Positions 975 through 50,217 of a stretch of 64,000 nt of DNA are shown in pieces (the first letter of the stretch is position 1; every line of letters begins with the position of its first letter). The notes below the pieces were generated by a model, which was given only the letters and a program-made list of their open reading frames with translations, was not told the origin of the DNA and searched no databases. Made by a program: the position numbers and the translations under genes. The DNA lies in IMG/VR virus record IMGVR_UViG_3300030202_003189, positions 124,001 to 188,000 of that record; one strand, 5' to 3'.

Positions 975-979
975 TCACT

Positions 980-2319: not shown

Positions 2320-2346
2320 ACATTATAACAAAAATATATTTCAATA

Positions 2347-2375
2347 TAAGGGCCTATTTAGGTCCTTAATTGTTT
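2347..2375 (+). terminator. Putative intrinsic terminator/hairpin after tail tube
   Basis: TAAGGGCCT-ATTT-AGGTCCTTA stem (one G.U pair) followed by ATTGTTT. Confidence 0.55.
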
Positions 2376-2411
2376 ACAAAGTGTTACACTTTACTATTCT
2401 TAGTAAATAAA
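2371..2411 (+). promoter_or_regulatory. Putative promoter upstream of tail chaperone (same class as 23217)
   Basis: TGTTTACA, 16-bp spacer, TATTCT, then TAGTAAATAAA. Confidence 0.5.
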
Positions 2412-2431
2412 CTGTATTAAAAAAAAAAGTT

Positions 2432-7626: not shown

Positions 7627-7631
7627 AAAAT

Positions 7632-11906: not shown

Positions 11907-11909
11907 AAA

Positions 11910-12227: not shown

Positions 12228-12230
12228 AAT

Positions 12231-24109: not shown

Positions 24110-24120
24110 TAATTATAGAT

Positions 24121-25119: not shown

Positions 25120-25137
25120 CCTTTTAATTACAATGAG

Positions 25138-26614: not shown

Positions 26615-26630
26615 AATAAAGATAAATAAT

Positions 26631-26638
26631 ATATTTAT
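26631..26638 (+). promoter_or_regulatory. ATATTTAT motif (candidate phage promoter)
   Basis: 19 nt upstream of helicase ATG. Confidence 0.45.
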
Positions 26639-26657
26639 TATTAAATAAATTAATAAA

Positions 26658-28031: not shown

Positions 28032-28047
28032 GAAAAATTTATAAAAA

Positions 28048-30396: not shown

Positions 30397-30777
30397 ATGG
30401 CGGTAAAAACAATTAATATAGGGTTTCCTTTCGAAACCTCACCTATTGGGAATTTTTTGAGGTTAAATAGAACATCAAAAGATGCGATAAAGTCTGATAT
30501 TACCCACCTTCTAATGACAAGAAAAGGGGAGAGACTTTACAATAATGAGTTTGGTTCGGGTTTATATACTTTTTTATTCGAACAAATTGACGAAAAAACA
30601 GTAACTGATATTAAATTAGAACTAACAGAAAGTATTGCTAAGTATATGCCTAATGTGACAATAGACGACTTAATAGTAGAGTCGGATCCTGATAATAATC
30701 ACATTAAAATTAACTTAGAATATACAATAACTAACACATCATTTGATGAGAGTGATGCAATTGAAATTATTTTATAA
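30397..30777 (+). CDS. Baseplate wedge / sheath initiator (T4 gp25-like, GPW_gp25)
   Basis: I.FPF, IKSDI..LLMT.KGER...EFGS.L..FLFEQ, I.KYMP.V.I. Confidence 0.92.
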   Translation: MAVKTINIGFPFETSPIGNFLRLNRTSKDAIKSDITHLLMTRKGERLYNNEFGSGLYTFLFEQIDEKTVTDIKLELTESIAKYMPNVTIDDLIVESDPDNNHIKINLEYTITNTSFDESDAIEIIL

Positions 30778-30779
30778 AA

Positions 30780-32588
30780 ATGGCTAATCAAGGAATTAAC
30801 TATAATGCACGTAATTTTGTAGAGGTAAGGTCGGAATTAATAAATTTTGTTAAACAATATTATCCTGATTTATTTAGTGATTTTAATGACGCTTCTGTGG
30901 GACAAATGTTATTGGAGCTTAACGCAGCGGTTGCTGACATGTTATCCTATAATACCGATAGAACATTTCAAGAAACACAGATAGACTATGCTCAGGAAAG
31001 AGCTTCCATATTAGCAATGGGACGTACTTTAGGATTAAATGTACCAGGAGTAAGACCTAGTATGTGTTTAGTAGATTTCACGGTAATTGTTCCCCCAAAA
31101 GGAGATAGTTTCGATATTAATTACGCACCTATGTTAAAATATGGATCTCAAGTAGAAGGGGCGGGACAAATATTCCAAGTAGATGAGGATGTTAACTTTG
31201 CATCCCCACTTTCATCAGGAGGAGTACCAAACAGATTGGTATTACCTAATAAAGACAGTAATGGTGTAATAGTATCTTATAGTATTGTTAAGAGAGAGGC
31301 GGTAATAAATGGTAGGAGTAAGGTATTAAAAAGAAATGTTAGACCTGAGGATATAAAACCATTTATGGAGATAATACTACCAGAGACTAATGTTACTAGT
31401 ATAGAACAAGTTAAACTAGTTGATGGATTAGACGCTGTGGAACCATCCTTATCTGACTTCCTAAAGTTTGAAAATAGTTTTTATGAGGTAGACTCTTTGG
31501 CCGAATCACAAGTTTTTATGGAAGATAAAAATAGACAGAGTGATAACGGGGCAATAATTCCTGGTAAATGGGTTAGTGTAGATAAGAGATTTGTAAAAGA
31601 TTACACGGATAAAGGATTTTGTAGATTAACTTTTGGTAGTGGTACACCAAACGCGCAACCTCTCGTAGACTATATTAATAATAATTCATTAAGTCAGATA
31701 GATAATGTACTTAACAATAAGAGTCTAGGAGAATTACCTAAGGCGAATTCAACACTGTTTATTAGATATAATGTAGGTGGAGGGGAATCCTCTAACGTTG
31801 GACCAAATGTGTTGCAGAATAAAGGGGTGATATATATGATAACACAAGGTAGTTCAGCTGCCAATAATGAAGTGGTAGAACTATCCTTAAAGTGTACTAA
31901 CCCTACTCCAGCTATTGGAGGTGCGGATACCCCATCAATAGATGAACTAAGACACTTAATAAAATATAATTTCGCAAGTCAAAATAGAGCGGTAACAGTA
32001 AGGGATTATTATACTCTCATCACAAAAATGAGTAGTAAATTTGGTGTTCCATATAAAAGCGCAATAGCCGAAACACAAAATAAAATTGAAGTATCAACAC
32101 TGAGTCTGGATAGTAATAGAAAGTTAACAGCAATATCGACAGATACACTTAATGATAATATGTCAAGATACCTGGCAAACTATAGAATGATAAATGATTA
32201 TATAACCGTAACGTCAGGAAAAATAATAAATATATCTATGGAGGTTTATTGTTATATTGATAAAAACTTTAATAAGTCATTAGTTATTTCTCAAATGATT
32301 AATACTGTTAGTACCTATCTGAGTGTAACCACCCAAACGATGGGTCAGAATATCTATTTATCTGACCTTACAAGAGAGTTAAATAATATTGATGGTGTTC
32401 TAAATATAGTAGAGTTTAAGGTTTATAATAAAATTGGTGGTAAATACTCTCTTAATATAACACCACAAGAACTAGACCCAACAACAAATGAAATATCAAT
32501 CAAAGAAAGTCTTACGTTATTCGGGAACTTTAACACCATGTATGAGATAAAATACCCAACCACTGACATTCAAGTATTCGCAAAGTAA
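30780..32588 (+). CDS. Baseplate wedge protein (T4 gp6 / baseplate J-like)
   Basis: Y.ARNF...R.EL, DFNDASVG.MLLE, A.ER.S, L.FG.G, Y.VGGG..SNV, NP.PA.GG.D, QNRAVT..DY. Confidence 0.9.
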   Translation: MANQGINYNARNFVEVRSELINFVKQYYPDLFSDFNDASVGQMLLELNAAVADMLSYNTDRTFQETQIDYAQERASILAMGRTLGLNVPGVRPSMCLVDFTVIVPPKGDSFDINYAPMLKYGSQVEGAGQIFQVDEDVNFASPLSSGGVPNRLVLPNKDSNGVIVSYSIVKREAVINGRSKVLKRNVRPEDIKPFMEIILPETNVTSIEQVKLVDGLDAVEPSLSDFLKFENSFYEVDSLAESQVFMEDKNRQSDNGAIIPGKWVSVDKRFVKDYTDKGFCRLTFGSGTPNAQPLVDYINNNSLSQIDNVLNNKSLGELPKANSTLFIRYNVGGGESSNVGPNVLQNKGVIYMITQGSSAANNEVVELSLKCTNPTPAIGGADTPSIDELRHLIKYNFASQNRAVTVRDYYTLITKMSSKFGVPYKSAIAETQNKIEVSTLSLDSNRKLTAISTDTLNDNMSRYLANYRMINDYITVTSGKIINISMEVYCYIDKNFNKSLVISQMINTVSTYLSVTTQTMGQNIYLSDLTRELNNIDGVLNIVEFKVYNKIGGKYSLNITPQELDPTTNEISIKESLTLFGNFNTMYEIKYPTTDIQVFAK

Positions 32589-32656: not shown

Positions 32657-35600
32657 ATGGGGGACAATCGAACAATACATTTAGCAACAAAAGAAGGCAC
32701 ACAAAGCGTTAATATAGACCTAGAACAAGATTTTGATTTCCTAGAGGTATTGAGTCTTCGTATAACACAACAAGAGGCTTATAGAATCTTCTGTGCGAAC
32801 TATGGAGTCTTAGTTGGTAAGGTAAAGGCAAACGGAGGTTATCCTATTAAGAACGCAAAACTATCTATTTTTATTCCATTAGACAATGTAGACGCAGGAA
32901 ATTCAGTAATAAGAAATATCTACCCTTTTGAGACACCTACAGACACACTACCATCAGGACAAAGATATAATTTATTACCCAGAGATAAGCAATTAGCGAC
33001 TCCGGCTGATCATACCCCTGTAGGGACGTTCCCATCCAAATATGACATAATGGTTAATGAAACATTATTATATGTTCATGAGAAGTACTATAAGTACACA
33101 ACCACCACCAATGAGAATGGAGATTATATGTTTTTTGGATTACCTATTGGAACCCAAATAGTTCACATGGATGTTGACTTAAGTGATATAGGAAATAATT
33201 CTGTAACACCAGCGGATTTAATGAATTTAGGGTATTCTGAGGCCCTATTTGAATCCGATGCTAAATTTAAGAGATCAAATGACTTAGACCAATTAGCTCA
33301 GATAGTTGGAATAAATAAAACAGTATATATTAGACCTTTTTGGGGTGATGTGGATGAATGTGAATATGGTATAACAAGGGCTGATTTTGATACCGCAAGG
33401 TTTGTTTTCCCTAAGGGTTATCTAATAGGAAGTGTATATACCGATGGACCAGCGGAGGATAATAACTCTTTTGTTCCTAAATCATGTTGGCAAGAAAGTT
33501 CAACCTCAGCTTCATCTGGAGTAGGACTTAGGGGAGGGGTTTCGCGAATCGTTAGAGCCGATAGTCTAAGAACACCAGAGGAGGTTGCTAGTGCTGGAGA
33601 GAAATATGGAAAAGTTGGAGTAGTAGAAGCTTGTAGATTAACATCAGACGGCACAACTGAATATGTTGGTAAATGGAATACAAAACCAGATGGGTCGTTC
33701 ATGATTCCCTTACCCTTAAATTTAGGAAAAAAGATTTGGGATGAAGATTCACAATCTTGGGTAGATAATGAGGATGAAGGGTTTGCCACTTTTGCAGATT
33801 ATAGATTTAAGATCTATTGGGAAGGTCAAGGGGATGGTAGTAATGAACAAAACGTGGAGAATTACTACGATAATACCATCAACACAACCCAGCTCATTTT
33901 AGGATCTGAGGGAGAAGGAGTACTACGTAGTCCAAAGTATTCTCAATCAGGAGAAGAATACGGCGACTCCTACTCTTCAATATCAAACCTTACGGGAAAT
34001 CTTTGGTACGGTACTTTTTATAATAATTCTAATAGAGATAGTGCAAAACTTAATAGAGGAGTATTATTTTTACCAAATCCATATGTTGATTTAGGTACCT
34101 CAGGAAGTGAGGAGGCTAATAGTTATACCTTCTTTGCAGAACCAGATACATTAAATGCTAGTTCAGCACCATTTAATATGAAGGATCAATTCGGTAATCA
34201 ACTAGGAAGATGGTCAAATTACACAAGAATTAGACTAAGTTCCTATTATACGGTTGCACAGTATTTTAATTATGTAAGTGATTATGATGTTGCAGTACCA
34301 GGTAGAAAACCTGAAGGTTGTTTTAGTGAAGGAATACTCGGGGCTTGGTATAATGGACCCGGAGATTCAGTTTACTCCACTCCAAATAAACCAAGTGTAT
34401 ATGATGACAATGGTCCTGATTGGAATACTCAAAGTGTAGGAACTAACCCTTGGATAATTTCAAGAAGTTGGGTTGATTCAGACGAAGAAATAAGACAATT
34501 CCCAGTTAATTATATTTTTAACAAATATAAAAGAAAAGATCCAAGATGGCAAGGAATACACTTAGAAGGTGATGAAGTGTGGTTGAAAAATTATGGAGGG
34601 TTTATATCTAACTACACCACAGCCTCATTAAAAGTCTATGCGGCTTTTAATATGGGGGCGTCGGCTGGGTTTAATGAACAAACAACCTCTAACTCCGCAG
34701 GATGTCATTTGGAACATATAATTGGAAATGGTGGTGGATTTAGAGGTAATCACAGAGCGGCTGCTCAGTATTGTGATACACAAGGAGATTGTTGTAACCC
34801 ACCCCAACTATTATATTGTACAACCAGTGCTTGTGATTGTACTAACGTATGTACTGGAACGTATGCAGGTAGCTCACTATTTTGTCAGGATGGCGATTGT
34901 TTTGGTAAGACGGACGGAACCAACGGAGTTATAGACGGATACTGGTTTACCACTGCTAGGAATTTCTACCATTTTGATATGGATGGGGCTTCAGGGAACG
35001 GAAACGATTTAATTTTTAACACTACAATAGATGAATGGGAATCCACCAATCATTTGGATGGTTGTAAAGGATGTATGGATTTGGATACAGTATATGAAGA
35101 TATGGCGAACTGGTCAATGACAGGAAGAGGAGGGTCTATATTTAACGAGGATGCTACTCCTTATTCGTGGGTTATGCCACCAGGTCAAACCCCATTATAT
35201 GACCCAAACCAAGGGGTTGATATATCGGGAACACTAACATATGGTAATATGAGAGATACTCCATCACCCCTAGCAAAGGGGTCAAATAAAGTTACAATGG
35301 TAGGTGATGGTGTAACTGAGAATACAGGTATTATGGGGAATACTATATGTGGCGGGTTTCTTGCTCCAGTATGGGGACAATACGCTGTCAGAGCACGTAT
35401 ACCTTACGGAGGAGCTGACTCTTGTTTCGCCGGTGTAGTTGGTATACACTATTGTGATACAACGAGAAAAAATTGTGACCTTAACGCCAATTGGAGCTAT
35501 TCTGCGGCGACCTCACAATTTTTTAATACAGGATATGATAAACAATCTGTATCCTTTGCCGGATTCGCAGGTAATGATGATTATACAAGATCACTGGACT

Positions 35601-37183
35601 ACTCATCTAACTATTGTCCAAGTTTTATCACCGGCCAACCAGCCCTAGTGGATAGTCACTGTAGTGCACTAGAGAAAAATGTAAGAGTTTGTGGGGATGG
35701 ACATGATAAGGATTGTGGAGCTCTGGGAGCTTACCACCAAAAAGGGGGTGGAGGATTCGTCAGTTGGGAATTACGTCTAAAGGAAGGTATGGCCGTTAGA
35801 TTAGGGGTACAACCGGTTGCTGCTAATAGTTGGGATAGTATTCCGGCATGGTGTGATCCCGGTATTACTTGTAATCACAATGGAACTACTGATGGTGGGA
35901 ATTTAGCAATCCCATCATTGGCACATGACCAAAATCTCTGTGATAATGGGTTTGGGTGTGGTTATGTCTACCTTAATATGTCGATTAGTCATTATGTGAA
36001 TCCTAGAGAAAGTGAACTCGTAGAGAATTACCAAAGAACAATAGGAGAACCAATACACGGTTCCTTATATTTTCCACAATACTATGTGGGTACTAACGAT
36101 GATGAATGTTGTTCAAGATCCAATGGTGACTTTGAGGGATGGAGTCATAATGCACCAGAAGAAAGACATAAAGTGGATGTATGGGAAAACTTTTCATTAT
36201 TATATGCTGGTAGTTTTATGGAGGTTAATGGGACTCTTAATTTTGAAAATTATACAACAGGACAAGGGGATGTGTTAGGGGGATCACCAGTGAGGAACGG
36301 TAAATATTATAACACTAGAACAATAGGAAATACAGATATTATTGAGATAACTAAAGAGAAACCTAATTTTAGACTGGGGCCAAACCAATGGGCTAGTATA
36401 GACATGAACTTACCTAATACATCAGTTAATTTAAGTTCTGATTATAATTATTCTCTAATATTAGATAAAAGTGATTATGGCCCTTTCTTCACCAATCAAG
36501 ACACTCAAAATTGGCCATTAACATACGGTGGAGGTATGGAAGAACTACAGAATAAGAATTTTGCACCATACGACTGGTTAGATTTTAGATTATCACAACA
36601 ATATCCTCCACAATTTGATACTAATGAGATAATGCAAAACGGTATTGGTGCTCAAGGAGATATTCCAGTTAATTGGGATTGGATGAATGGTGGTAATTGG
36701 GGGGCATCAACCTCCTCATTGGTTTATCCAGTACAATTTCCTTATTATGCTACCGCTGGTAATCTTGTTGAGTCTAACTATAATGTTTTCAGATACGACG
36801 TCCAAGGATTTTCTCAAGGGGGTGTTGTATTTCCTGGGGTATATCCTAGGTGGTACAATTGGTTAAGACCAATGCCAGAGAGTTGGTATTCTACTAATAC
36901 TTTTTGGTGGAAAGACATCTACGCCCTATCAACCGAATATAAAGAGTTAGATGGTGAAACTCCAGGAGCTTATAGTCCAACAACGCCATGGTCAGCAGGT
37001 GAAACTTATAATAATGACTGGGGTACTCAGAAGACACAAGAAGTTGGTAGATCAGGATGGAGTGCAACTAATCTAAATGCTTATCCTATTCGAAAATATT
37101 ATTATTTCGGTCTTAGGAAAAATAGATGGACATCTTTAGATGAATTAAAAGATGTATTAGGAAACGTACAAATGGATTATTAA
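32657..37183 (+). CDS. Large baseplate/tail structural protein with Cys/Trp-rich insertions
   Basis: Globular-looking N-terminus (LEQDFDFLEVLSL, YGV..G.V, KYYKYTT.TN..GDYM.FG.P.G, PFWG, GITRADF) and terminal YYYFGL; Cys-rich centre. Confidence 0.65.
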   Translation: MGDNRTIHLATKEGTQSVNIDLEQDFDFLEVLSLRITQQEAYRIFCANYGVLVGKVKANGGYPIKNAKLSIFIPLDNVDAGNSVIRNIYPFETPTDTLPSGQRYNLLPRDKQLATPADHTPVGTFPSKYDIMVNETLLYVHEKYYKYTTTTNENGDYMFFGLPIGTQIVHMDVDLSDIGNNSVTPADLMNLGYSEALFESDAKFKRSNDLDQLAQIVGINKTVYIRPFWGDVDECEYGITRADFDTARFVFPKGYLIGSVYTDGPAEDNNSFVPKSCWQESSTSASSGVGLRGGVSRIVRADSLRTPEEVASAGEKYGKVGVVEACRLTSDGTTEYVGKWNTKPDGSFMIPLPLNLGKKIWDEDSQSWVDNEDEGFATFADYRFKIYWEGQGDGSNEQNVENYYDNTINTTQLILGSEGEGVLRSPKYSQSGEEYGDSYSSISNLTGNLWYGTFYNNSNRDSAKLNRGVLFLPNPYVDLGTSGSEEANSYTFFAEPDTLNASSAPFNMKDQFGNQLGRWSNYTRIRLSSYYTVAQYFNYVSDYDVAVPGRKPEGCFSEGILGAWYNGPGDSVYSTPNKPSVYDDNGPDWNTQSVGTNPWIISRSWVDSDEEIRQFPVNYIFNKYKRKDPRWQGIHLEGDEVWLKNYGGFISNYTTASLKVYAAFNMGASAGFNEQTTSNSAGCHLEHIIGNGGGFRGNHRAAAQYCDTQGDCCNPPQLLYCTTSACDCTNVCTGTYAGSSLFCQDGDCFGKTDGTNGVIDGYWFTTARNFYHFDMDGASGNGNDLIFNTTIDEWESTNHLDGCKGCMDLDTVYEDMANWSMTGRGGSIFNEDATPYSWVMPPGQTPLYDPNQGVDISGTLTYGNMRDTPSPLAKGSNKVTMVGDGVTENTGIMGNTICGGFLAPVWGQYAVRARIPYGGADSCFAGVVGIHYCDTTRKNCDLNANWSYSAATSQFFNTGYDKQSVSFAGFAGNDDYTRSLDYSSNYCPSFITGQPALVDSHCSALEKNVRVCGDGHDKDCGALGAYHQKGGGGFVSWELRLKEGMAVRLGVQPVAANSWDSIPAWCDPGITCNHNGTTDGGNLAIPSLAHDQNLCDNGFGCGYVYLNMSISHYVNPRESELVENYQRTIGEPIHGSLYFPQYYVGTNDDECCSRSNGDFEGWSHNAPEERHKVDVWENFSLLYAGSFMEVNGTLNFENYTTGQGDVLGGSPVRNGKYYNTRTIGNTDIIEITKEKPNFRLGPNQWASIDMNLPNTSVNLSSDYNYSLILDKSDYGPFFTNQDTQNWPLTYGGGMEELQNKNFAPYDWLDFRLSQQYPPQFDTNEIMQNGIGAQGDIPVNWDWMNGGNWGASTSSLVYPVQFPYYATAGNLVESNYNVFRYDVQGFSQGGVVFPGVYPRWYNWLRPMPESWYSTNTFWWKDIYALSTEYKELDGETPGAYSPTTPWSAGETYNNDWGTQKTQEVGRSGWSATNLNAYPIRKYYYFGLRKNRWTSLDELKDVLGNVQMDY

Positions 37184-40100
37184 TGGAAAGAAAAAAGACA
37201 ATAAGAACACAAGATAAAAGAGCCGGAGCTAAAGGAATAGGCTATAGTGAGACTGTTGGTTTTACTAACACAAATAAACCTTTACCAACGGGAGAGGTTA
37301 TTAAAATAGTTAGTCAATCAGAACAGTTTTTTACTGAAAGAAAAGAATCAAAATTATATCGACTAACCGCTACTCTCACACCATTAGTTTATCTACCACA
37401 ACAATATTATTGGATAGGTGCTAACTTAGCACCAAATGGTGAATTAGCAATCGTAGATTCGACATCACAAACAAGTGTATATGAAACATTAAATTATTCA
37501 TTACCTAATATTCTCACACCATCCTTTGCCGGTGGTAACCCAACAGAATATAATTTTGATTTAGATAATACTAGTAATTGGGTAGGACATATTTTATACC
37601 CTTATGAAAATGAATATCTAAAACTATATACAATACCAGAGTTTACTGCCAGTCTTATGTTTATTCCAGATATTAACGATGCAAGATATGGGATTAATAC
37701 TGGAATAAATGATTTAGTATATTATGATATAGTGAACTATTTAGAGAGTGATTTAGATGGATTAACAATATCAGAATGGTTTAACGGAGTTGACCATATC
37801 TTAGAAGAACCACTATGGGTAGATAATAGTGGGGCGGTTGTACCAGTCACCGATGAAAATGCTACTACACTAACTTTCCCAGAACTAAAAATAAGTAATC
37901 AAGAGTATAAAGGGTACACACAAGATGGAGTTCCTTTTCTTTTTAGTGTTCCGGTAAAAACAGAACAGGGATGGTATACCGCATTATATACACCATTTGA
38001 ACATAATTTCGAGGAAGGTGACTATATCTTTGTTAAACCATTGGTTACAATTGGATATGTAACACTAAACGGTAAATATGACACTTGTGACCCTAGTTTA
38101 TATGGATTTAAGAGAGTAATTGGTGCATCATGGGATGTGGTAGGAGATAAATACTCGAGACACTATGTTATTATTGAACATAAGACTAAAAAACATTGGG
38201 ATTGGGTAACAGCTGGTGGTGGAACAAACACAGCTGGAGAAAACTATACATGGAGCGTTGAAAGCTCACAAGGGTTTATAAAGAAGGTGTCAAACTACTC
38301 ACCAGAACTTATCCAATCAATAAGTGTTGAATTTATAAATCTTTCTCATTTTACTCTAATTCCTACTCAACCAGATACCATTCTGGTTACCCTAGGTGTG
38401 TTAGAAACTGGATTAAGAGTTGATGATAAAGTGTTAATAACCATATCTGAAGATGCTTATGGTACAGAATTTTATGAAGAAAGAAGACCATCGTTATTTA
38501 ATTTAAGTGGAATATATACTGTTGCGAGTATTGAAAGTTTATTCTCTTTTACAATACGTGCAAGAGAAATTCAGGATAATATACCATTTTTTGATCAAAC
38601 TCTAAATCAGTTGGTATTTGGTGGAACAAACTATCGTGTTGAGGTATCAAGGATAGGGTCGACACCATCAGAATATTACCTAAGAAAAGGAAAAATTATA
38701 ACAAGTATTAATAATTTTGAGATTAATAAATTACCTTTTAGTAATAGTATATATAGTGATCCTAATTATAATGTTGTTGTAGATGAGGATATTGATATCT
38801 CTAAAATAAAAGATAACTACGGAAAACCAATCTCTGAGTTATTCTTAATGTTAACTAAGAGAGCGGGGCAGAAAACATACGATTTTACTGATGTAGAATG
38901 TTTCTTTTCTTGGATGTTTAACTACTCCTCTATATTAGTAAAAACAGGTGATGGGTTAGATATAGTATCAAAAAGAAGTGCTGATAGTAAACTTAGTGGA
39001 CATGTAAAGAACGTAAGCGGTGGTTTTATGAGTGAATATAATGATTATTTAGGTGATTGGTATTATATGGATTTTGTGGAATATAACAATACTCAACTCA
39101 CTGAAACTAGAATAGAGAGATTAAAAAATAGATTTAATACAATAGGACGGGAATGTCCAGATAATAAATGTGATGAAGTTTTAATTGACGGATCAAATGG
39201 ATTTGAGATAAATATATGGGACGTTTACAATAGTTACAATGTGGGGAGTCTAACTTTAACAGATGGGGGTTCTAGTATTGGAGGAATACTAAGCTCAAGT
39301 AGTGCAGGTCTCGGACAATCACAACCAGCAGATGGTAATTACATATATACTACAGTTTTTATCACTCCAGAATTATGTAATTTACCAGATGAGGGGTTAT
39401 TATTGGAATTTGATTTTACACAGGTCACAACCACAGGGGTGGTTAGAATCCTAGGACCATCTGGGAATGAAGAGACTTTAGGGAATGGTTCTTCGGCTCT
39501 GTTTGTTGGAACTGCCGCTGATGTAAATGGAGTTGCTCAAACAATAAACTACTCACTAACATTCAACCCAGCCACTTCTGGAGTTTATAGAATATTATTA
39601 GGTATAGTTAATTTTGAAGGAAGTTATGATGCTAATACGGGGGGTACGTTTTCTCCACCATATGAGGCTTACTTCAATAATGTTACCTTAATGAGGTATT
39701 TTGGTACACCAAAATATGGTGGATGGGTATACGATCCTCTTGCGGATTACCAGATAAAAAGATGGTCAAGTTATATAGAAACTGCTGACCCTTCAGTTCT
39801 AGGTATTCCTTATTGGGCTCAAGATGTGGATGGACTAATGGTTTGGAGAGAATTACTAGATATTGGTTATTTTGAAGATGTGGAACAGACCTTAGGGGTA
39901 GATTACCCTTTCCTAAACGGAAAACACTATATTAATATAGATAAAACAATTGCTGTGGGTATAACACCGTCCAAACTTGGAGAAAATAGTTCTTCTTACT
40001 CTACTGTAATATATGGATGTATGGATGATGTGGCTGCCAATTATAACCCTTTTGCAACATATCCTTGTGCCAGTAATATAGTGCAAGGCGGACCATGTGT

Positions 40101-43524: not shown

Positions 43525-46500
43525 ATGGAATATATAAAAAGAAAAATATCAAGAGGAAGTTTATTAGGAGATAGGACTAATATGAGACGAGCGATTCTAA
43601 ATCCAGAACCGATATACACTAATGGAATATATCCTTATCCTTGTTTGGACACCAATCAATCTATGGATGATTGTATTGAATCCCTTTTTATTGACGTAGA
43701 TGCTGATGGTATTAAGGACTGGTTTGTGATTCCTCCTACATGGTTTGGTGGTAATTTAGTAACTGATGCTTATGGTCAGTGGGAGCAAGATATTGATGAA
43801 AAAATTATAGAACTATTTAATGACTTTATTGATGACGCTTTTCATGATGATTTTGAAATGGGAACCGCTAGATGGTATGGAGGTAGTGAAGAATACGATA
43901 CAAAATTAGTGTGGAATCAGTATAGCCCATATATTGTTATTCCGGGAAATAATAATATTAGATTAGAAATTACTGATATTATCGGAGGTGCCGTTCCAAA
44001 CTTTGGTAGACTAATTTTACAAACTCCATCAGTTAATCCCCTATTATCTCCAGGGGTTATGGATCCATTTACACTAAATCAAGGAATACAGTTATCGGCT
44101 GGAGTGAATTATAGATTATCGGTGAATATAATGAGTAGAGTTAGGTCACATAAAGACTTTATCGATGATTTGGCAACCACCAACCCTTTCCAAGTCCAAA
44201 TAATGGGAATTGATATGGTAACTCAAAATTTAGTGGTGTTCGATTGGTCATCAGAACAGATTCCATATTATCCTGATAGAGAAACTATAACAACTACATT
44301 CACTGCACCTTCAGGAGGTAACTACTGGTTTACTATAGTGGTTAATATACCAGCAGGACCAACAGGAGTGGTAAATATGGTAGGCGACTTTATACAAATA
44401 GATGATTTCTCAATCTCATTAGAAAGTTCACCCAGTCAACAGAATACTTTTAACTCAGTAAAAAGAAAAGTATTTGGATTCTTCAAAGGGTTTAATATAT
44501 TACCAACTGCTTACAATATAGAATTATATAAACATAACATAACAGGATATCTTCTAAATTCTGACCCAATAGATGTTGACAATTTACCTCTAGGGGTGTA
44601 CGGGTCTCAAACGTACGATGATTTAGGGAACCAAGTTTATTATGAATTAACTAACCCTCCTTTAGGGGTTATCCCTTTCTATTATCTTGGTTATAATCTT
44701 TATGGTGCTATAACTACTAATGTACAAGGTAATACCCTAATGAATGATGGGTACTTGTATTGTAATGGTGCAGATTTAGGACCGTGGGATGGGGTTAATA
44801 ATATATACGAAATAGGGGATGTGGTAGAAGATACTACAGGTTCATTGTGGTATTGTAGTGCTCTTATTAATGGAGAATGTAATACATGTGCACCAGAAGA
44901 TGATTGTGGATGGGTGAAATGTTTAAGTATGTTGGCATATGGTGGAGGAACTTTGAATATTAATATACCACTTTACCAAGACGTAAAAGATATTGGTATT
45001 TATAGGGATGTAATTCACCCTGGTATTGCGGAGGAATGTAGTGGAAGTGTAGAAACTTTAACTGAAGATTATAAATGCCCAATACCTTATTATATACAAG
45101 ACAATGGGGCTGTTATGTTTTATGACCCCCTAACAACTAAAGAGATAGTAGTTAAAAGACCATGTTGTGAGGACTATAGTGAATATGGTTTTGTGTGGTG
45201 GAATGGTAAGTGTTATTTAGACTATGGTAATGACATACAAGGACAAGGAAAAGAATTATTTAATTTTCCTTATAGTACTCTGTTTCTAGGAAGAGGTGAT
45301 AATGGGTTGTTATATTCAGATGTTGGTCTCCAATCACCAGACCAGGTATTTGTAAATTCAGGACTTCAAGGGGAAATAATACAAGATAGTGGAGAAAGAG
45401 TGTTACTTTATAGTCCTTTAGTGAATGATGTCATAGATGGTGTAACATATATCGCTAAAGCAACCTTAACAATGGAGGATTATAATAGTCAAACCCTGAG
45501 TACAATACAATTAGGAGCAACAGGACAACTCGATCCAGACTGGGGTTATATATATTTCGAAGATTTTGAAATGGGAGAAGATGACGATTTACAACCAGGT
45601 GTAATAACTACTCCAGGGGCAACAGTTATAGATGCGGTAGTAGATGGTATATATACCATAATAACCGATGACTTTCCAGGATTAGCGTTAAATCTAATAA
45701 GATCATTAGAACAGAATAGAACCTATAGATTCCGGTTTGGGTATGTTGGTCTTACATTAGGTGGAACAACAACACCATATTATACCCCATCAGTTGATAA
45801 TGTATTACAGGGTACTGATCTACATATTGAAGTTTCAGCATACCCTGGTGGTACAACGGTAATACCTCTTATGTTCTATGGAGGATCAGGGTCTAATGAC
45901 ATTGAGGCGGTCTTCACAATCCCAGCCACAGGTAACTACTTAATACAATTATTAGTTGTCAACCCACAAGGATCATTTATCGCTGGAGATTTTTATGGTT
46001 TTGGATTAGATTATTTTGCAATTGATGAGATGCCCTATAATTACACAACTGACAACAATACATTAATTACTCCAAGAAAAGTATGGTCTAGTAATTCTTT
46101 TGATGCTGCGGATGGACTACAAACAATAGAGTTGGAGAGCGAAATTACAGTTAGAGGAGCTACAGATTTAAGTTTAAGGTTAATATGTGATATTAAAGAA
46201 CCGATAGTTAATAGTCCTTTAACTTTTACTCTACTCTTAAAAGATTTATCATTGAAATATCACCAAAAACCAAATTTCTTAGGGTGTAAACCAACTCATT
46301 TCCTTAATGAGGTAAGTAATACCTTTACACAAGAAATTAATACACTTACACCTACCCAGGATGGAACCTATGACACTTTCTCCCCGGTAATCCCTGGGGC
46401 TATTAACCAACTAACATTTGGGTCTGCTTTTGGTGCACAAGGGATACAAGGAAGTGATATTCAAACTACATCAGCTCCTTATGTAACACCAGTATTTGGT

Positions 46501-47637
46501 ACTGATCATAGAATAATCCCATCTGGACCAGAAGATACAAGTGCTCAGTGCGAAACTTCACAATTTATTGTGGGATGGTATTGTAACCTTAACTATTATA
46601 TTGAACTTAATGGAATACCAGTCCAACAACCTGATGGTTCTTTAGGAGTTAGAGGTTGTGTGGGTTCTCCAGTGATGATTCCAGGGGTTACCATGTATTC
46701 TACAGCAGCTGATTGTGTGGCGCAAAGTGATTGTACATCTATAATTGGGTGTATGAATGACGAGGCCACTAATTATAATCCCTCGGCGACAGAACCTTGT
46801 TTTGACCTAAATAACGTACCAGGTCAAAATTATGTTTGTGAATGTGGGATAACTTCTAGTTGTGTGGATCCAAATTCTATACTAACTAATCAACAATATT
46901 CGGGTCTTTGTTTTGGTGACCAAAATATGTGTACCGATCCCGCTCAATGTAATTCTAACTGGGTACCATTATTAAATGGAGGTCATTGTTGTGTTATGGA
47001 AGACTCAGATTGGGGATGTATGGATTACAATTCAGAGGACTGGGCCCCTAATATGGAATACGATGGAGGAGAAGTTTATTGTCATTATCAACCAGGATGT
47101 CCCGACCCTACTGCAAGTAACTATCTAGTAGGACCAAATAATTGTACACCACAGGTGGGGCCAAATGGTAACGTATATAGTTGTACTGATTGTTCTGGTA
47201 ATCCACCTTCTTCAGTTTGGGGATTAACAGCACAAGCAACTAATACCTCCTTAGGGATAACACAAGGACAATTACTATACTCAAACGCTATAATACCTGG
47301 GACTCTAGGTGACACTAGTTGTTGTTATTTTGATAATTCTAACGATATGCCAATAGGGTGTAGTGACCCAATGGCGGTTAACTTTGGCGACCCAATTAAT
47401 ATAGATTGTGCAAATGCAATTAATAACGGTGACCCCTGTTTCGATAATGGCACTTGTCTATATGGTACCATATTTGAAGTACATTGTTGTGTCAATGTTG
47501 GTGGGACATGGGGACCGGCATGTGACGGTTACACCTTACTAAGTCAAGCTTCTTATGATGCTTTAATGAACTCTTCGGGTGGTATGTGTCAGGATCTTTT
47601 ATCTGATTGTATAAATTTAACCCCATGTACAAGTTAA
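43525..47637 (+). CDS. Multi-domain structural/adhesin-like protein (CBM-like jelly rolls, CBM5/12-like module, GCxD repeats)
   Basis: Two DFEMG-initiated beta modules, W.....Y.IGD.V....G..W.C...P...W module, several GCxD.A.NY repeats. Confidence 0.6.
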   Translation: MEYIKRKISRGSLLGDRTNMRRAILNPEPIYTNGIYPYPCLDTNQSMDDCIESLFIDVDADGIKDWFVIPPTWFGGNLVTDAYGQWEQDIDEKIIELFNDFIDDAFHDDFEMGTARWYGGSEEYDTKLVWNQYSPYIVIPGNNNIRLEITDIIGGAVPNFGRLILQTPSVNPLLSPGVMDPFTLNQGIQLSAGVNYRLSVNIMSRVRSHKDFIDDLATTNPFQVQIMGIDMVTQNLVVFDWSSEQIPYYPDRETITTTFTAPSGGNYWFTIVVNIPAGPTGVVNMVGDFIQIDDFSISLESSPSQQNTFNSVKRKVFGFFKGFNILPTAYNIELYKHNITGYLLNSDPIDVDNLPLGVYGSQTYDDLGNQVYYELTNPPLGVIPFYYLGYNLYGAITTNVQGNTLMNDGYLYCNGADLGPWDGVNNIYEIGDVVEDTTGSLWYCSALINGECNTCAPEDDCGWVKCLSMLAYGGGTLNINIPLYQDVKDIGIYRDVIHPGIAEECSGSVETLTEDYKCPIPYYIQDNGAVMFYDPLTTKEIVVKRPCCEDYSEYGFVWWNGKCYLDYGNDIQGQGKELFNFPYSTLFLGRGDNGLLYSDVGLQSPDQVFVNSGLQGEIIQDSGERVLLYSPLVNDVIDGVTYIAKATLTMEDYNSQTLSTIQLGATGQLDPDWGYIYFEDFEMGEDDDLQPGVITTPGATVIDAVVDGIYTIITDDFPGLALNLIRSLEQNRTYRFRFGYVGLTLGGTTTPYYTPSVDNVLQGTDLHIEVSAYPGGTTVIPLMFYGGSGSNDIEAVFTIPATGNYLIQLLVVNPQGSFIAGDFYGFGLDYFAIDEMPYNYTTDNNTLITPRKVWSSNSFDAADGLQTIELESEITVRGATDLSLRLICDIKEPIVNSPLTFTLLLKDLSLKYHQKPNFLGCKPTHFLNEVSNTFTQEINTLTPTQDGTYDTFSPVIPGAINQLTFGSAFGAQGIQGSDIQTTSAPYVTPVFGTDHRIIPSGPEDTSAQCETSQFIVGWYCNLNYYIELNGIPVQQPDGSLGVRGCVGSPVMIPGVTMYSTAADCVAQSDCTSIIGCMNDEATNYNPSATEPCFDLNNVPGQNYVCECGITSSCVDPNSILTNQQYSGLCFGDQNMCTDPAQCNSNWVPLLNGGHCCVMEDSDWGCMDYNSEDWAPNMEYDGGEVYCHYQPGCPDPTASNYLVGPNNCTPQVGPNGNVYSCTDCSGNPPSSVWGLTAQATNTSLGITQGQLLYSNAIIPGTLGDTSCCYFDNSNDMPIGCSDPMAVNFGDPINIDCANAINNGDPCFDNGTCLYGTIFEVHCCVNVGGTWGPACDGYTLLSQASYDALMNSSGGMCQDLLSDCINLTPCTS

Positions 47638-48624: not shown

Positions 48625-50217
48625 ATGGCACAACCAGGATGTATTGATGAATTATGTTTAAGTTTTGACTTTGCTTCTTATCCGTATAGTGGCCCAATTA
48701 ACTCGTATTTCTTTGAGTCTATTGACACTAATGTGGCTAATGTTTGGGGACTACCAACTCCGGTAATCGGAGCGTTTAATCCGTTCAGTTTAGGGGCAAA
48801 TATTTTGATCGGTAGTAGTGACGCTGGTATGACGTCAACCACTACCGGACTAAGTACCTCTTACGAATTATTTTACTTCCAAGGAGGTAATTTCTTATCA
48901 GTTCCATTGGCAACTCCAATTCTTATACCAAGTACCTATGTTGTTAGAGTCACTTCTACATCTGAAATCGCAGATGATGGGTCGGCTTGTATTTATGATT
49001 TTTCTTTCGCAATAAATAATAATTATGATTTTATTCCTTTTGTGATGGCTGGTTCCACAGGAGCGAATGGTTGGTGTAATGCCTGGGGATGTACTGAAGC
49101 ATCATCACCTAATTATATTCCAGGGGCTAATGCAAATGACGGTTCTTGTGTCTATAATATGGATGCTGATCCTTATGGTTGTACCGATAATAATGCTTGT
49201 AATTACGATTTCTTAAAAACTATTGACGACGGAAGTTGTAATTATGATTGTTATGGATGTACAGACCCTAACGCTGGTAATTGGAACACTTCAGCAACAA
49301 TTCCATGTAATGGACTCTATAATTTTTGTGTAAATATGGGGGTTTCCAACTGTTGTTGTGATTATAACCAACAAACATTTGGGTGTACAGATTTTTTAGC
49401 AGATAACTACGATTCATCAGCTTCATTTGACGATGGAAGTTGTACCTTCACAACTGAAGGATGTACGGATCCTAGGGCAGATAATTATAACCCTATTTAT
49501 ACAACTGATGATGGAACTTGTAGTATTGGTGGGTGTATGGATAACACAGCTTCTAATTGGAATCAGGAAGCCACGTTTGACAATGGTTCCTGTGTGTATG
49601 ATAACTGTAAATATGGTTGTACGGACCCAACATCGTCTAATTATGATATTTACGCAACTTGTGATGACGGTTCTTGTATGGGTGGATGTTGTGGAAAAAC
49701 AAACTCAGGTAATTTTATAATTACAGGTACTACAGAAAGTAAATTAAACAGAATTAAGTGGCTTGGGACCGCTATAGGGGTCGACTCAAGTGGTGCGGTT
49801 CAAGACAATGTAAATATTGCGATGACTGATGCAAACATGACGGCAAAATACGGTGTTAATCAATGGTATCCTTTAGTTAGAAGAGTCCCATCTTTAGGAA
49901 TGAAGAATGGATGGACACAAATAACTCCTGGAGTTGTTACTGCATACACCATTGATAATATACATTATTGGGATTATGAGATAGGAAAACAATCAATGTT
50001 CGCAGTAGAGATGAAAAATTGTTGTCCAGGATGTCTTTATCCAGATATAAAAGAAGAGTGGACAATGGGACATGTTTTCCCTCCACAAATAGAAAATAAT
50101 GTATTTATAGATAGAGGAATTGCTTCCGTTTTTGAAGAACATTATAGATTAACAGAAGTTAAGACTTTGGAGGATTTTGATATTTACCAATCAGGATTTT
50201 TCAATATAATAAATTAA
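48625..50217 (+). CDS. Structural protein with tandem GCTD...DDGSC repeats
   Basis: Seven repeats, then ITGTTESKL ... KEE...G.V.PP.I.NNVFIDRG..SVFE.H.RL.EV.TL C-terminal domain. Confidence 0.65.
   Translation: MAQPGCIDELCLSFDFASYPYSGPINSYFFESIDTNVANVWGLPTPVIGAFNPFSLGANILIGSSDAGMTSTTTGLSTSYELFYFQGGNFLSVPLATPILIPSTYVVRVTSTSEIADDGSACIYDFSFAINNNYDFIPFVMAGSTGANGWCNAWGCTEASSPNYIPGANANDGSCVYNMDADPYGCTDNNACNYDFLKTIDDGSCNYDCYGCTDPNAGNWNTSATIPCNGLYNFCVNMGVSNCCCDYNQQTFGCTDFLADNYDSSASFDDGSCTFTTEGCTDPRADNYNPIYTTDDGTCSIGGCMDNTASNWNQEATFDNGSCVYDNCKYGCTDPTSSNYDIYATCDDGSCMGGCCGKTNSGNFIITGTTESKLNRIKWLGTAIGVDSSGAVQDNVNIAMTDANMTAKYGVNQWYPLVRRVPSLGMKNGWTQITPGVVTAYTIDNIHYWDYEIGKQSMFAVEMKNCCPGCLYPDIKEEWTMGHVFPPQIENNVFIDRGIASVFEEHYRLTEVKTLEDFDIYQSGFFNIIN
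49087..49677 (+). repeat. Seven tandem GC(T/M)(D/E)xxAxN(Y/W)xxxAxxDDGSC-type coding repeats
   Basis: GCTEASSPNY, GCTDNNACNY, GCTDPNAGNW, GCTDFLADNY, GCTDPRADNY, GCMDNTASNW, GCTDPTSSNY read directly from the translation. Confidence 0.9.

What the first reader, a model, noticed from the sequence alone, without database searches (positions are those of the whole stretch)
43840..46260. Duplicated and nested carbohydrate-binding-like modules plus a CBM5/12-like domain
Seen: two modules start with DFEMG (identical 15 nt GATTTTGAAATGGGA at 43849 and 45562) and share L..G/N..YR.....FT.P..GNY......D.F.I. The second appears inserted inside a third module (VIDGVTYIAKATL ... IELESEITV...LKDLSL). PWDGVNNIYEIGDVVEDTTGSLWYC...P...GW (~44782-44922) fits the CBM5/12 chitin-binding pattern. 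A related module sits in 37183. Inference: together with the GH18-like hub domain, the virion may bind and cut GlcNAc glycans, for example adhering to particles colonised by its host.
Basis: partly seen in the sequence, partly recalled or inferred. Interest (0 to 1): 0.6.

Follow-up and report, generated by a model that had tools for sequence, protein, structure and literature searches.

The report
Phage tail protein with CBM-like modules
The finding lies in a 1370-residue protein of the baseplate and tail-fibre gene block of an uncultured marine contractile-tailed phage; it carries two old duplicate sugar-binding-type beta-sandwich modules, one probably nested in another domain, which is the usual way phages build host-recognition proteins, and no chitin-cutting link was found.

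Summary
The finding lies inside one ORF (43525-47637, +, 1370 aa). This ORF follows gp25-like and gp6-like baseplate wedge genes in a 231-kb marine myovirus record.

- **Duplicate modules:** Module 1 (aa 105-302) and module 2 (aa 669-842) are true paralogues. hhalign gives E 2e-7 over 146 columns, with a score of 44-51 against at most 19 for shuffled controls. The exact 15-nt repeat on its own is only marginally beyond chance.
- **Fold:** AlphaFold models of both modules superpose on solved CBM4/CBM22/CBM16/CBM70 jelly rolls (Z 13.8 and 11.2).
- **Sequence link:** A combined module profile retrieves bacterial surface proteins at stretches that Pfam calls CBM_4_9. The phage modules themselves stay below Pfam's cut-off.
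- **Nesting:** Module 2 looks nested in a third beta-sandwich. The support is the model's strand pattern, higher conservation of the flanks, and a weak complementation score (0.40 against 0.02).
- **CBM5/12-like stretch:** It has the motif and a language-model lead, but fails every profile test.
- **GH18:** No GH18 domain is detectable in the genome.

The best reading is a baseplate-attached receptor-binding or adhesion protein with variable, exposed glycan-binding-type modules. It is a new member of a known kind.

The parts
43525..47637 (+). ORF of 1370 aa (P0001) that holds the whole finding. It belongs to a protein family found only in uncultured marine phage contigs.
   Evidence: 17 homologues at 36-96% identity, aligned as A1. 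No Pfam or PHROG family. No match in 50,697 GenBank phage records.
43525..43836 (+). N-terminal region, aa 1-104. The first 40 residues are conserved. Possible attachment part (inferred).
   Evidence: A1. Mean pairwise identity 0.43. Not modelled with confidence.
43837..44430 (+). Module 1, aa 105-302: a CBM4/CBM22-type beta jelly roll that starts FxDDF(E/S)xG..W and ends GDFxxIDDF.
   Evidence: AF2 model m0801cdecf4b4, residues 16-209, pLDDT about 75-90. Foldseek top hits are CBM70, CBM4, CBM22 and CBM16 at E 3e-6 to 1e-4. VIA gives 1gu3_A (CBM4) Z 11.2, rmsd 3.0 over 127 of 142 residues. Least conserved region of the protein, identity 0.36.
44431..44751 (+). Conserved linker, aa 303-409, partly helical and poorly modelled.
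   Evidence: pLDDT below 50. Identity 0.57.
44752..44934 (+). Small six-cysteine beta domain, aa 410-470, with a CBM5/12-like half-motif (W421, Y428, G431-D432, V434, G439, W442-Y443). C455 and C461 are lost together in one homologue.
   Evidence: A1 and A4. pLDDT about 75. The nearest named clusters in the language-model search are all CBM5/12, but at scores of 0.81-0.83, which the tool rates as a lead only. Pfam PF02839 finds nothing. A profile search of PDB sequences finds nothing relevant. hhalign against the E. coli ChiA CBM5/12 gives E 0.15.
44935..45237 (+). Most conserved core, aa 471-571, with five cysteines. Likely scaffold or assembly part (inferred).
   Evidence: Identity 0.69. Dense invariant columns. 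aa 514-564 are modelled as beta at pLDDT about 70.
45238..45528 (+). N-terminal half of the outer beta-sandwich ('third module'), aa 572-668.
   Evidence: Model mc0710d000e50, strands at 13-102, pLDDT about 76-83. Identity 0.51.
45529..46050 (+). Module 2, aa 669-842: a CBM4/CBM22-type beta jelly roll, paralogue of module 1, inserted between the two halves of the outer sandwich.
   Evidence: hhalign against module 1 gives E 2e-7. VIA gives 1gui_A (CBM4) Z 13.8, rmsd 2.4 over 136 of 155 residues, model range 112-272. CBM22, CBM70, CBM16, CBA120 TSP4 and K2-2 TSP score Z 12-13.6. These results come both from the Foldseek-led search and from the exhaustive search. Identity 0.35.
46051..46278 (+). 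C-terminal half of the outer beta-sandwich, aa 843-918. Four predicted strands, including IELESEITV and LKDLSL.
   Evidence: Model strands at 282-348, pLDDT about 77-87. Split-chain complementation with aa 572-668 scores ipSAE 0.40 (runs 0.40, 0.44, 0.39) against a best control of 0.02; partner pLDDT at least 52; at least 75% of contacts shared. The tool's verdict is 'weak support'.
46279..46701 (+). Variable linker, aa 919-1059, after the invariant PNFLGC..THFL motif.
   Evidence: A1. Identity 0.37.
46702..47637 (+). Cysteine-rich C-terminal region, aa 1060-1370 (30 Cys), with four degenerate copies of the genome-wide GC.D..A.NY.P.A repeat.
   Evidence: BLASTP to gp48625 gives E 5e-14, and to gp37183 aa 919-1016 gives E 2e-4. 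Motif census.
39190..39687 (+). Candidate related module in the neighbouring 1730-aa protein (gp37183, aa ~670-835). Weak.
   Evidence: hhalign of the module 2 profile against the gp37183 family gives E 8.7e-3 on the whole protein and E 1.2e-3, Prob 19%, 73 columns on the sub-region. The module 1 profile points to the same place at E 0.06-0.26. It shares the F(T/N)-P-x3-G-x-Y strand.
30397..32588 (+). Context: gp25-like (30397-30777) and gp6-like (30780-32588) baseplate wedge genes that open the block of large ORFs holding this protein.
   Evidence: PHROGs phrog_261/43 (E 2e-25) and phrog_6/219 (E 1e-16). Tail sheath, tail tube and T4-type baseplate hub lie at 3-3190.

Best explanation
P0001 is most likely a baseplate-attached receptor-binding or adhesion protein (a side-fibre or peripheral baseplate protein) of an uncultured marine myovirus.

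- **Scaffold:** A conserved scaffold would fix it to the tail. It comprises the N-terminus, the aa 303-571 core with a small disulfide-bonded domain, and the outer beta-sandwich.
- **Binding modules:** Two paralogous CBM4/CBM22-type jelly-roll modules are the exposed, fast-evolving parts. One lies near the N-terminus. The other is inserted into a loop of the outer sandwich, so it projects from it. They would bind a host surface polysaccharide (capsule, O-antigen or other exopolymer) reversibly during adsorption.
- **C-terminus:** The cysteine-rich C-terminal repeats, shared with neighbouring tail genes, would add stable extracellular modules of unknown partner.

Shown here: the paralogy of the two modules, their predicted fold, the gene context, and the family-wide conservation pattern. 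Inferred: virion location, nesting, glycan binding and which glycan. No catalytic domain was found.
For: Gene context:
- The ORF lies in a co-directional block directly after gp25-like and gp6-like wedge genes, in a genome with T4-type sheath, tube and hub genes.
- The same gene order, about 12 genes long, is kept in relatives down to 36% identity.

Paralogy of the two modules:
- hhalign gives E 2e-7 over 146 columns. Controls against the middle region give Prob below 1%. Shuffled controls reach a maximum score of 19 against 44-51 for the real pair.
- MAFFT aligns the copies end to end.

Fold:
- Module 2 matches CBM4 1gui at Z 13.8, rmsd 2.4 over 136 residues.
- Module 1 matches CBM4 1gu3 at Z 11.2 and a mannanase CBM (1wky) at Z 11.3.
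- Both hit the same set of folds: CBM4, CBM22, CBM16, CBM70, and the tailspike or fibre domains of CBA120 TSP4, K2-2 TSP and Kp7 gp52.
- BFVD hits are minor tail proteins, tail fibres and a 'CenC-like carbohydrate-binding' phage protein.

Sequence bridge to CBM_4_9:
- The combined module profile hits P0032, P0037 and P0064 (library-wide E 1.9e-9, 1.3e-8 and 5.4e-5). In each, the matched stretch coincides with a Pfam CBM_4_9 domain above cut-off.
- Six of the nine long-stretch hits carry CBM_4_9.

Exposure:
- Modules 1 and 2 are the least conserved regions (identity 0.36 and 0.35). The scaffold regions score 0.51-0.69.

Occurrence:
- The gene recurs in marine and seawater metagenomes from at least 7 studies.
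Against: - No Pfam, PHROG or PDB sequence match exists for the protein itself. The modules are below the CBM_4_9 cut-off, and one homologue reaches only E 0.005.
- Per-domain scores in the bridge search are modest (10-25 bits). Many other hits of that search are PKD or Ig repeats that match only the short FT.P..G.Y strand.
- The same fold also occurs in non-glycan binders (MAM, ephrin-receptor LBD, Cry and Vip toxin domains), so the fold does not prove sugar binding.
- There is no proteomic or structural evidence that the protein is in the virion.
- The models rest on only 17 sequences (pLDDT 73.7 and 59.6).
- The host is unknown.
Confidence: 0.6

Rival explanations
1. The jelly-roll modules are structural or protein-binding decorations of the baseplate. 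They would bind an outer-membrane protein, or serve as inter-subunit contacts or stabilisers, and not act as lectins.
For: The same fold class serves protein recognition in MAM domains, ephrin-receptor ligand-binding domains and Cry/Vip toxins, all among the hits at Z 10-11. No ligand-binding residues could be checked. Pfam CBM_4_9 is not reached.
Against: The top-ranked matches are consistently bona fide CBMs and the glycan-directed domains of phage tailspikes. The sequence bridge leads to CBM_4_9 domains. The high variability fits a receptor-recognition role but does not separate glycan from protein receptors.
Confidence: 0.22
2. One reading: the virion binds and cuts GlcNAc glycans such as chitin. 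A CBM5/12 domain in this protein would work with a GH18-like hub domain, for example to adhere to chitinous particles colonised by the host.
For: aa 421-446 carry the first half of the CBM5/12 motif. hhalign aligns this stretch in the expected register with the Pfam-verified CBM5/12 of E. coli ChiA. The ten nearest named clusters in the language-model search are CBM5/12 proteins, several of them viral, at scores of 0.81-0.83.
Against: - Pfam CBM_5_12 finds nothing in the protein, in its 16 homologues, or in the six-frame genome at E <= 10.
- The domain profile finds no solved CBM5/12 chain. Its best hit is an SH3-like R67 DHFR at E 0.39.
- The hhalign match has E 0.15 and Prob 0.4%.
- Atlas scores below 0.9 are reached by a third of shuffled proteins.
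- Pfam Glyco_hydro_18 finds nothing in the 231-kb record at E <= 10, and the hub gene matches only T4_baseplate.
- The domain has six conserved cysteines, which is atypical of CBM5/12 (the comparison is from my own knowledge).
Confidence: 0.08
3. The protein is not a virion component. It would be a secreted or cell-surface-acting phage protein, for example one that modifies or masks host polysaccharide during infection.
For: No direct evidence places it in the virion. There are many cysteines and CBM-like modules, as in the secreted bacterial proteins retrieved by the profile (T9SS-sorted proteins).
Against: It sits inside a conserved, co-directional block that starts with baseplate wedge genes and is syntenic across the family. 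Structural look-alikes among viral proteins are tail proteins.
Confidence: 0.05

Closest known systems
CBM4 / CBM22 / CBM16-type carbohydrate-binding modules (Pfam CBM_4_9, PF02018; e.g. PDB 1gui, 1gu3, 4xuo, 2zew)
   Same: Both have a beta jelly-roll of about 150-200 residues. The first strand reads (D/N)F(E/S)xG..W and the last strand reads xDD(F/V)x(I/V), with a late FT.P..G.Y strand. Predicted models superpose at Z 11-14, rmsd 2.4-3.0. A profile bridge leads to proteins with Pfam-verified CBM_4_9 at the matched stretch.
   Different: The phage modules are below Pfam's gathering score. They are not attached to any glycoside hydrolase. No ligand or binding cleft has been shown. They sit in a phage tail protein.
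CBM-like distal domains of phage tailspikes and tail fibres (CBA120 TSP4 5w6h, Klebsiella K2-2 TSP 8iq9, phage Kp7 gp52 7xyc, phi812 baseplate 9euf)
   Same: The same jelly-roll fold appears on host-recognition proteins of tailed phages (Z 9.4-13.2). The position in the tail gene block is similar.
   Different: Those proteins have a beta-helix depolymerase or a trimeric fibre shaft. Neither was detected here, there is no sequence similarity, and the oligomeric state of P0001 is unknown.
'Evolved' siphophage distal tail proteins with inserted CBMs (Pfam Dit-like_CBM2, PF21869; seen in Enterococcus phage Stockyards Dit)
   Same: A complete CBM-type module is inserted into a loop of a host beta-sandwich of a tail protein, giving a nested domain architecture.
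   Different: The host domain, the phage morphotype (siphovirus versus myovirus) and the sequence family all differ. The weak tblastn hit to Dit (E about 1) falls in the SPP1_Dit C-terminal domain and is not meaningful.
CBM5/12 chitin-binding domains (Pfam PF02839; e.g. E. coli ChiA aa 461-494)
   Same: Both share the W-x5/6-Y-x2-GD-x-V half-motif, and the domain is small and all-beta. The language-model neighbours are CBM5/12 clusters.
   Different: No profile match was found. The second half of the domain is a six-cysteine segment without counterpart. No GH18 or GH19 partner is in the genome.

Membership tests
CBM_4_9 (Pfam PF02018; CAZy CBM4/9/16/22-type modules) | Match to the family HMM at or above the gathering score (25.9 bits) | tested here: not met
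   No hit for P0001 at E <= 0.1. No hit in the six-frame genome at E <= 10. One of 17 homologues reaches E 0.0051, below the cut-off.
CBM_4_9 (Pfam PF02018; CAZy CBM4/9/16/22-type modules) | Beta-sandwich jelly-roll fold that superposes on solved family members over most of the domain | tested here: met
   This holds for predicted models only. Module 2 against 1gui_A: Z 13.8, rmsd 2.4, 136 of 155 residues. Module 1 against 1gu3_A: Z 11.2, rmsd 3.0, 127 of 142 residues.
CBM_4_9 (Pfam PF02018; CAZy CBM4/9/16/22-type modules) | Sequence homology traceable to accepted members (transitive profile link) | tested here: met
   The combined profile A5 hits P0032 (aa 96-214), P0037 (aa 412-557) and P0064 (aa 210-367) at library-wide E 1.9e-9 to 5.4e-5. 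Pfam places CBM_4_9 at aa 81-194, 413-545 and 212-338 of those proteins. The support is moderate: per-domain scores are 10-25 bits, and many other hits are PKD or Ig repeats.
CBM_4_9 (Pfam PF02018; CAZy CBM4/9/16/22-type modules) | Demonstrated carbohydrate binding in a cleft lined by aromatic residues | not testable with these tools
The invariant residues seen (F, G, Y, R, G) look structural.
CBM5/12 (Pfam PF02839) | Match to the family HMM (cut-off 26.2 bits) | tested here: not met
   No hit in P0001, in any of the 17 family members at E <= 1, or in the genome at E <= 10. The same model finds the E. coli ChiA domain at 39-48 bits.
CBM5/12 (Pfam PF02839) | Profile similarity to solved or verified CBM5/12 domains | tested here: inconclusive
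   The A4 profile against PDB sequences finds no CBM5/12 chain at E <= 10. hhalign of A4 against the ChiA CBM5/12 aligns the WDG..Y..GDvV segment in register, but at E 0.15 and Prob 0.4%. The language-model neighbours are CBM5/12 clusters at 0.81-0.83, which the tool rates as a lead only.
CBM5/12 (Pfam PF02839) | Small three- or four-stranded fold with a row of exposed aromatic residues; chitin binding | not tested
   The domain is modelled at pLDDT about 75 with short strands.
   No match at E <= 10 in the 231-kb record. The hub gene at 2432-3190 matches T4_baseplate and phrog_150 only. The record is estimated to be 70% complete, so absence from the whole phage is not shown.
Phage tail proteins with a nested (inserted) CBM, as in evolved Dit proteins | A complete CBM domain inserted between two segments that together form one host domain | tested here: inconclusive
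   Solved CBMs align to one contiguous stretch, model residues 109-275. That stretch is flanked by 5 + 4 confident strands. The flanks are more conserved than the insert (0.51 and 0.54 against 0.35). Split-chain complementation of the flanks scores 0.40 against a best control of 0.02, a 'weak support' verdict. The outer domain's fold could not be searched alone. hhalign of the joined flanks against modules 1 and 2 is not significant.
Myovirus baseplate / tail-fibre gene module | Location in a conserved co-directional block next to baseplate wedge genes | tested here: met
   gp25-like and gp6-like genes lie at 30397-32588. Synteny is kept in L002, L003, L004, L007, L008 and L009.

The most novel reading that the evidence does not exclude
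The aa 410-470 domain is a divergent, disulfide-stapled CBM5/12. Together with the two CBM4/22-type modules it would make the virion adhere to chitinous or other polysaccharide particles (marine snow, copepod or diatom exopolymers) and not only to the host cell. That would be a particle-adhesion strategy for a widespread clade of uncultured large marine myoviruses.
Probability: 0.1. Interest if true: 0.6.

Novelty: new member of a known kind. Interest (0 to 1): 0.3.

Why it matters
The family has no annotation in Pfam, PHROGs, GenBank phages or the PDB. It nevertheless recurs in marine metagenomes of several independent studies, inside a conserved tail gene block of a large uncultured myovirus lineage. 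Parsing it into a conserved scaffold plus two variable CBM4/22-type modules marks the likely host-range determinants of that lineage. It also gives defined constructs (aa 105-302, 669-842, 405-475) for glycan-array or host pull-down work, which could help identify the unknown host. As biology it is ordinary: CBM-decorated and CBM-inserted tail proteins are a well-known theme.

Tried and rejected
Searches that found nothing or failed:
- Megablast and tblastn of the region and the protein against GenBank phages gave no match.
- A full-length family profile against PDB sequences gave only chance hits at E 0.3-1.8.
- The genome search 'relatives' and 'of' were tried to collect diverse CBM5/12 sequences for a proper profile-profile test. 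Only the single E. coli ChiA domain could be used.
- A literature search for the Cys-repeat motif gave nothing relevant. The two general literature searches gave only background.

Weak or spurious hits rejected:
- tblastn of the CBM5/12-like stretch against phages gave hits only at E about 1. The Syn19 hit spans an intergenic/psbD region. The Enterococcus Dit hit lies in the SPP1_Dit C-terminal domain, not in a CBM5/12.
- Module HMMs against all 447 ORFs of the genome found no further copy. The only cross-hit is the module 2 model on module 1 (i-E 0.0023).
- hhalign of module profiles against six neighbouring protein families found only the weak gp37183 hit.

Tests of the outer module that did not settle it:
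- hhalign of the joined outer-module flanks against modules 1 and 2 is not significant. The only local match is the L..G..Y strand, at E 0.16-0.34. The outer module is therefore not shown to be a third paralogue.
- The complex prediction split-domain test returned only 'weak support' (score 0.40, best control 0.02). By the tool's calibration, 51 of 78 solved complexes and 2 of 108 mismatched pairs reached the mark. At 0.60 or under, only 5 of those 78 solved complexes passed, as did all 4 mismatches that passed.
- Atlas shape search, BFVD and the exhaustive VIA search of the aa 565-940 model were all filled by the inner jelly roll and did not test the outer domain.

Full report
**Location and context**

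The finding (43840-46260) lies wholly inside one ORF, 43525-47637 on the + strand, 1370 aa (P0001). The window is bases 124001-188000 of a 231,285-bp IMG/VR virus record that CheckV rates 70% complete. G+C is about 35%.

PHROGs and Pfam identify the following genes in the window:
- tail sheath (3-974), tail tube (1831-2319) and a T4-type baseplate hub (2432-3190);
- a replication block (23291-29958);
- a gp25-like wedge gene (30397-30777) and a gp6-like wedge gene (30780-32588).

After the wedge genes comes an unbroken co-directional run of large ORFs: 1508, 1730, 300, 77, 1370 (ours), 322, 530, 296, 1415, 106 and 775 aa.

The sheath and gp6-like proteins are only 25-41% identical to their best cultured relatives. 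These are Microcystis phage Mel-JY01, Flavobacterium phage immuto, and the uncultured 484-kb record LR756508. The phage is therefore a contractile-tailed phage of an uncultured marine lineage, and the protein sits where baseplate-peripheral and fibre proteins are encoded.

**The protein family**

- P0001 has no Pfam or PHROG family.
- It has no relative in 50,697 GenBank phage records.
- Its family profile finds no solved structure.
- All come from marine metagenomes (Tara, JGI, ENA) and all lack names and Pfam domains.
- One viral contig (L002) carries an 81%-identical copy in the same gene order.
- Five more relatives, down to 36% identity, show the same neighbourhood of about 12 genes. One of them shows the gp6-like gene upstream.
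- Near-identical DNA occurs in marine or seawater metagenomes of at least seven studies, not counting the possible source samples.

**Check of the observation**

- The 15-mer occurs exactly twice, at 43849 and 45562, and encodes DFEMG at aa 109 and 680.
- On its own this is weak evidence. The protein has two repeated pentapeptides against 0.85 expected, and 21% of shuffles reach that number. The ORF has one repeated 15-mer against 0.064 in codon shuffles, and 4.4% of shuffles reach it.
- The codons used are the commonest ones, and in L002 the second copy reads DFSMG. Other short DNA repeats in the ORF are out of register and look like chance.
- What is conserved in both places in all 17 sequences is the looser motif (F/Y)-x-(D/E/N)-(D/N/S)-(F/Y)-(E/S/D/Q)-x-G.
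- The real evidence for duplication comes from profiles. The aa 100-302 profile against the aa 668-842 profile gives hhalign Prob 93.7%, E 2e-7, with 146 aligned columns that span both modules. Either module against the middle region gives Prob below 1%.
- With a second match-state setting the score is 44.1. Forty column-shuffled controls give mean 12.9, sd 2.1 and maximum 19.0, and a reversed control gives 15.1.
- MAFFT aligns seven copies of each module end to end.
- BLASTP sees only the last 45 residues of the similarity, at E 0.005. The duplication is therefore old.

**Fold**

Two AlphaFold2 jobs were run with the 17-sequence alignment.
- aa 565-940 gave mean pLDDT 73.7 and pTM 0.62, all beta.
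- aa 95-580 gave mean pLDDT 59.6. It is good only for aa 116-302 (about 75-90), aa 414-464 (about 75) and aa 514-564 (about 70).

Module 2 (model residues 109-275):
- CBM4 1gui_A at Z 13.8, rmsd 2.4 over 136 of 155 residues;
- CBM4-2 at Z 13.6, CBM70 at Z 13.4 and CBM22 at Z 13.2;
- the distal domains of CBA120 TSP4 (Z 13.2), Klebsiella K2-2 TSP (Z 12.8) and Kp7 gp52 (Z 12.1).

These results hold both in the Foldseek-led second look and in the exhaustive comparison with 48,161 representative chains.

Module 1 (model residues 16-209) hits the same set at Z 9.4-11.3. Among predicted viral structures the best matches are minor tail proteins, tail fibres and a 'CenC-like carbohydrate-binding' phage protein. 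Atlas neighbours include CBM_4_9/MAM proteins and viral hypotheticals.

Both modules are thus predicted CBM4/CBM22-type jelly rolls.

**Sequence link to CBM_4_9**

The modules themselves do not reach Pfam CBM_4_9. One homologue reaches E 0.005. Because family scans left the protein open, I used the one exhaustive profile search with the combined 14-copy module alignment (A5).
- It found 79 proteins at E <= 0.001 in 1.84 billion. Three are family representatives.
- Among the nine hits whose best stretch covers most of the profile, six carry Pfam CBM_4_9 above cut-off.
- In three of them (P0032, P0037, P0064) the matched stretch coincides with the CBM_4_9 domain. Several are T9SS-sorted Bacteroidota-type surface proteins.
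- Two cautions apply. Per-domain scores are modest (10-25 bits). Many of the remaining hits are PKD or Ig-repeat proteins that match only the short FT.P..G.Y strand several times.

I therefore file the modules as divergent relatives of the CBM_4_9 superfamily by fold and by a moderate transitive link, not as members by Pfam's criterion.

**Nesting**

- Solved single-domain CBMs align to one contiguous stretch, model residues 109-275 (aa 673-839).
- The flanks are more conserved (0.51 and 0.54) than the insert (0.35).
- Folding the two flanks as separate chains gave ipSAE 0.40 (runs 0.40, 0.44 and 0.39) against a best control of 0.02. Partner pLDDT was at least 52 and at least 75% of contacts were shared. 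The tool calls this 'weak support'. Its calibration: 51 of 78 solved complexes and 2 of 108 mismatches reached the mark, but at 0.60 or under only 5 of those 78 solved complexes passed, as did all 4 mismatches that passed.
- The joined flanks are not detectably homologous to modules 1 and 2. Their fold could not be searched alone.

I put the nested arrangement at about 0.7. In CBM4-type jelly rolls the two termini lie side by side, which makes such insertions easy. That last point is established knowledge, not tested here.

**The CBM5/12-like stretch**

- aa 421-446 carry W-x6-Y-x2-GD-x-V-x4-G-x2-WY, which is invariant in the family.
- A language-model search of aa 408-472 returned CBM5/12 clusters as all ten nearest named neighbours, several of them viral. 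The scores were 0.81-0.83, which the tool rates as a lead only.
- Every alignment-based test failed:
  - Pfam CBM_5_12 finds nothing in the protein, its relatives or the genome, although it finds E. coli ChiA at 39-48 bits.
  - The domain profile finds no solved CBM5/12 chain. Its best hit is the SH3-like R67 dihydrofolate reductase at E 0.39.
  - hhalign against the ChiA domain aligns the expected half-motif, but at E 0.15 and Prob 0.4%.
- The domain has six conserved cysteines. One homologue (P0013) has lost C455 and C461 together, which suggests that they form a disulfide pair (inference).

Membership is not shown. I give it about one chance in three that the fold is CBM5/12-like.

- The gp37183 family has a weak, same-place match to both module profiles at aa ~741-814. 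Module 2 gives E 8.7e-3 on the whole protein and E 1.2e-3, Prob 19% on the sub-region. Module 1 gives E 0.06-0.26. A similar F-N-P-x3-G-x-Y strand is present. This is suggestive only.
- Pfam Glyco_hydro_18 finds nothing in the record at E <= 10, and the hub gene matches only T4_baseplate. The glycan-cutting half of the inference has no support here. The record is incomplete, and I did not fold the hub.

**Mechanism**

The pattern is the usual anatomy of a phage host-recognition protein:
- a conserved N-terminus and core, with aa 471-571 the most conserved at 0.69;
- two variable CBM-type modules, one displayed on a loop of another sandwich;
- a cysteine-rich tail that shares repeats with the neighbouring genes gp48625 (E 5e-14) and gp37183;
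- a position after the wedge genes.

I therefore read it as a baseplate-attached receptor-binding or adhesion protein whose jelly-roll modules bind host surface polysaccharide reversibly. No enzymatic domain was detected.
- Shown: paralogy, predicted fold, context and conservation pattern.
- Inferred: virion location, nesting, glycan binding and specificity.

**Novelty and limits**

CBM-like modules on tailspikes and fibres, and CBMs inserted into tail proteins (evolved Dit proteins, Pfam Dit-like_CBM2, seen), are well known. This is a new, unannotated family of that kind in an uncultured marine lineage.

Limits:
- The models rest on 17 sequences.
- Model coordinates could not be inspected, so no binding-site analysis was possible.
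- The outer sandwich and the small cysteine domain were never searched as isolated folds.

Noticed in passing
window 46702-47634 (P0001 aa 1075, 1164, 1191, 1278); window 48625-50217 (6 copies); window 40015 region (gp37183 aa 945); window 47672 region (gp47651 aa 8); outside the window G000:C1:17503-20538 (13 copies), 33021-36809 (18 copies), 203415-206612 (5 copies): A cysteine-bearing repeat of about 24-26 aa, consensus GCTDPxAxNYNPxATxDDGSC, occurs as tandem arrays in at least seven large ORFs across the phage genome. Pfam gives no hit for gp48625 at E <= 0.1, and only faint or weak DUF3721 hits on the downstream neighbour in relatives. It looks like a phage-wide, probably disulfide-stabilised extracellular module.
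   Followed up: partly
window 44752-44934 (aa 410-470): Six conserved cysteines lie in a 60-aa beta domain. Homologue P0013 has lost C455 and C461 together, which fits a C455-C461 disulfide. The best (non-significant) PDB profile hit is the SH3-like R67 dihydrofolate reductase, not a CBM5/12.
   Followed up: partly
window 30397-58002 and loci L002, L003, L004, L007, L008, L009: A block of about 12 tail genes is strictly syntenic in relatives down to 36% identity: gp25-like, gp6-like, then ORFs of about 1300-1580, 1670-1770, 255-400, (78-86), 1190-1385, 320-340 (1057 and 398 aa in two relatives), 530-580, 296, 1350-1420, 106 and 745-780 aa. Almost none of these proteins has any Pfam or PHROG family.
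   Followed up: partly
window 23291-29958: A replication and nucleotide-metabolism block (SSB, UvsX-like recombinase, exonuclease, DnaB-like helicase, ribonucleotide reductase) lies between the sheath/tube/hub genes and the baseplate wedge genes. It splits the tail module in two.
   Followed up: no
window 5023-20471: Three very large ORFs (867, 1424 and 2746 aa) directly follow the baseplate hub gene. The two scanned (867 and 1424 aa) have no Pfam family, and the 867-aa one has no PHROG family. The 2746-aa ORF (12231-20471) was not examined.
   Followed up: no
proteins P0025, P0032, P0037, P0070, P0080 (hits): Several of the closest non-phage look-alikes of the module profile are T9SS-sorted (Por_Secre_tail) multi-domain surface proteins typical of Bacteroidota. 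The nearest cultured phages by sheath and gp6 include a Flavobacterium phage, and G+C is about 35%. This is a faint hint at a Bacteroidota host, nothing more.
   Followed up: no
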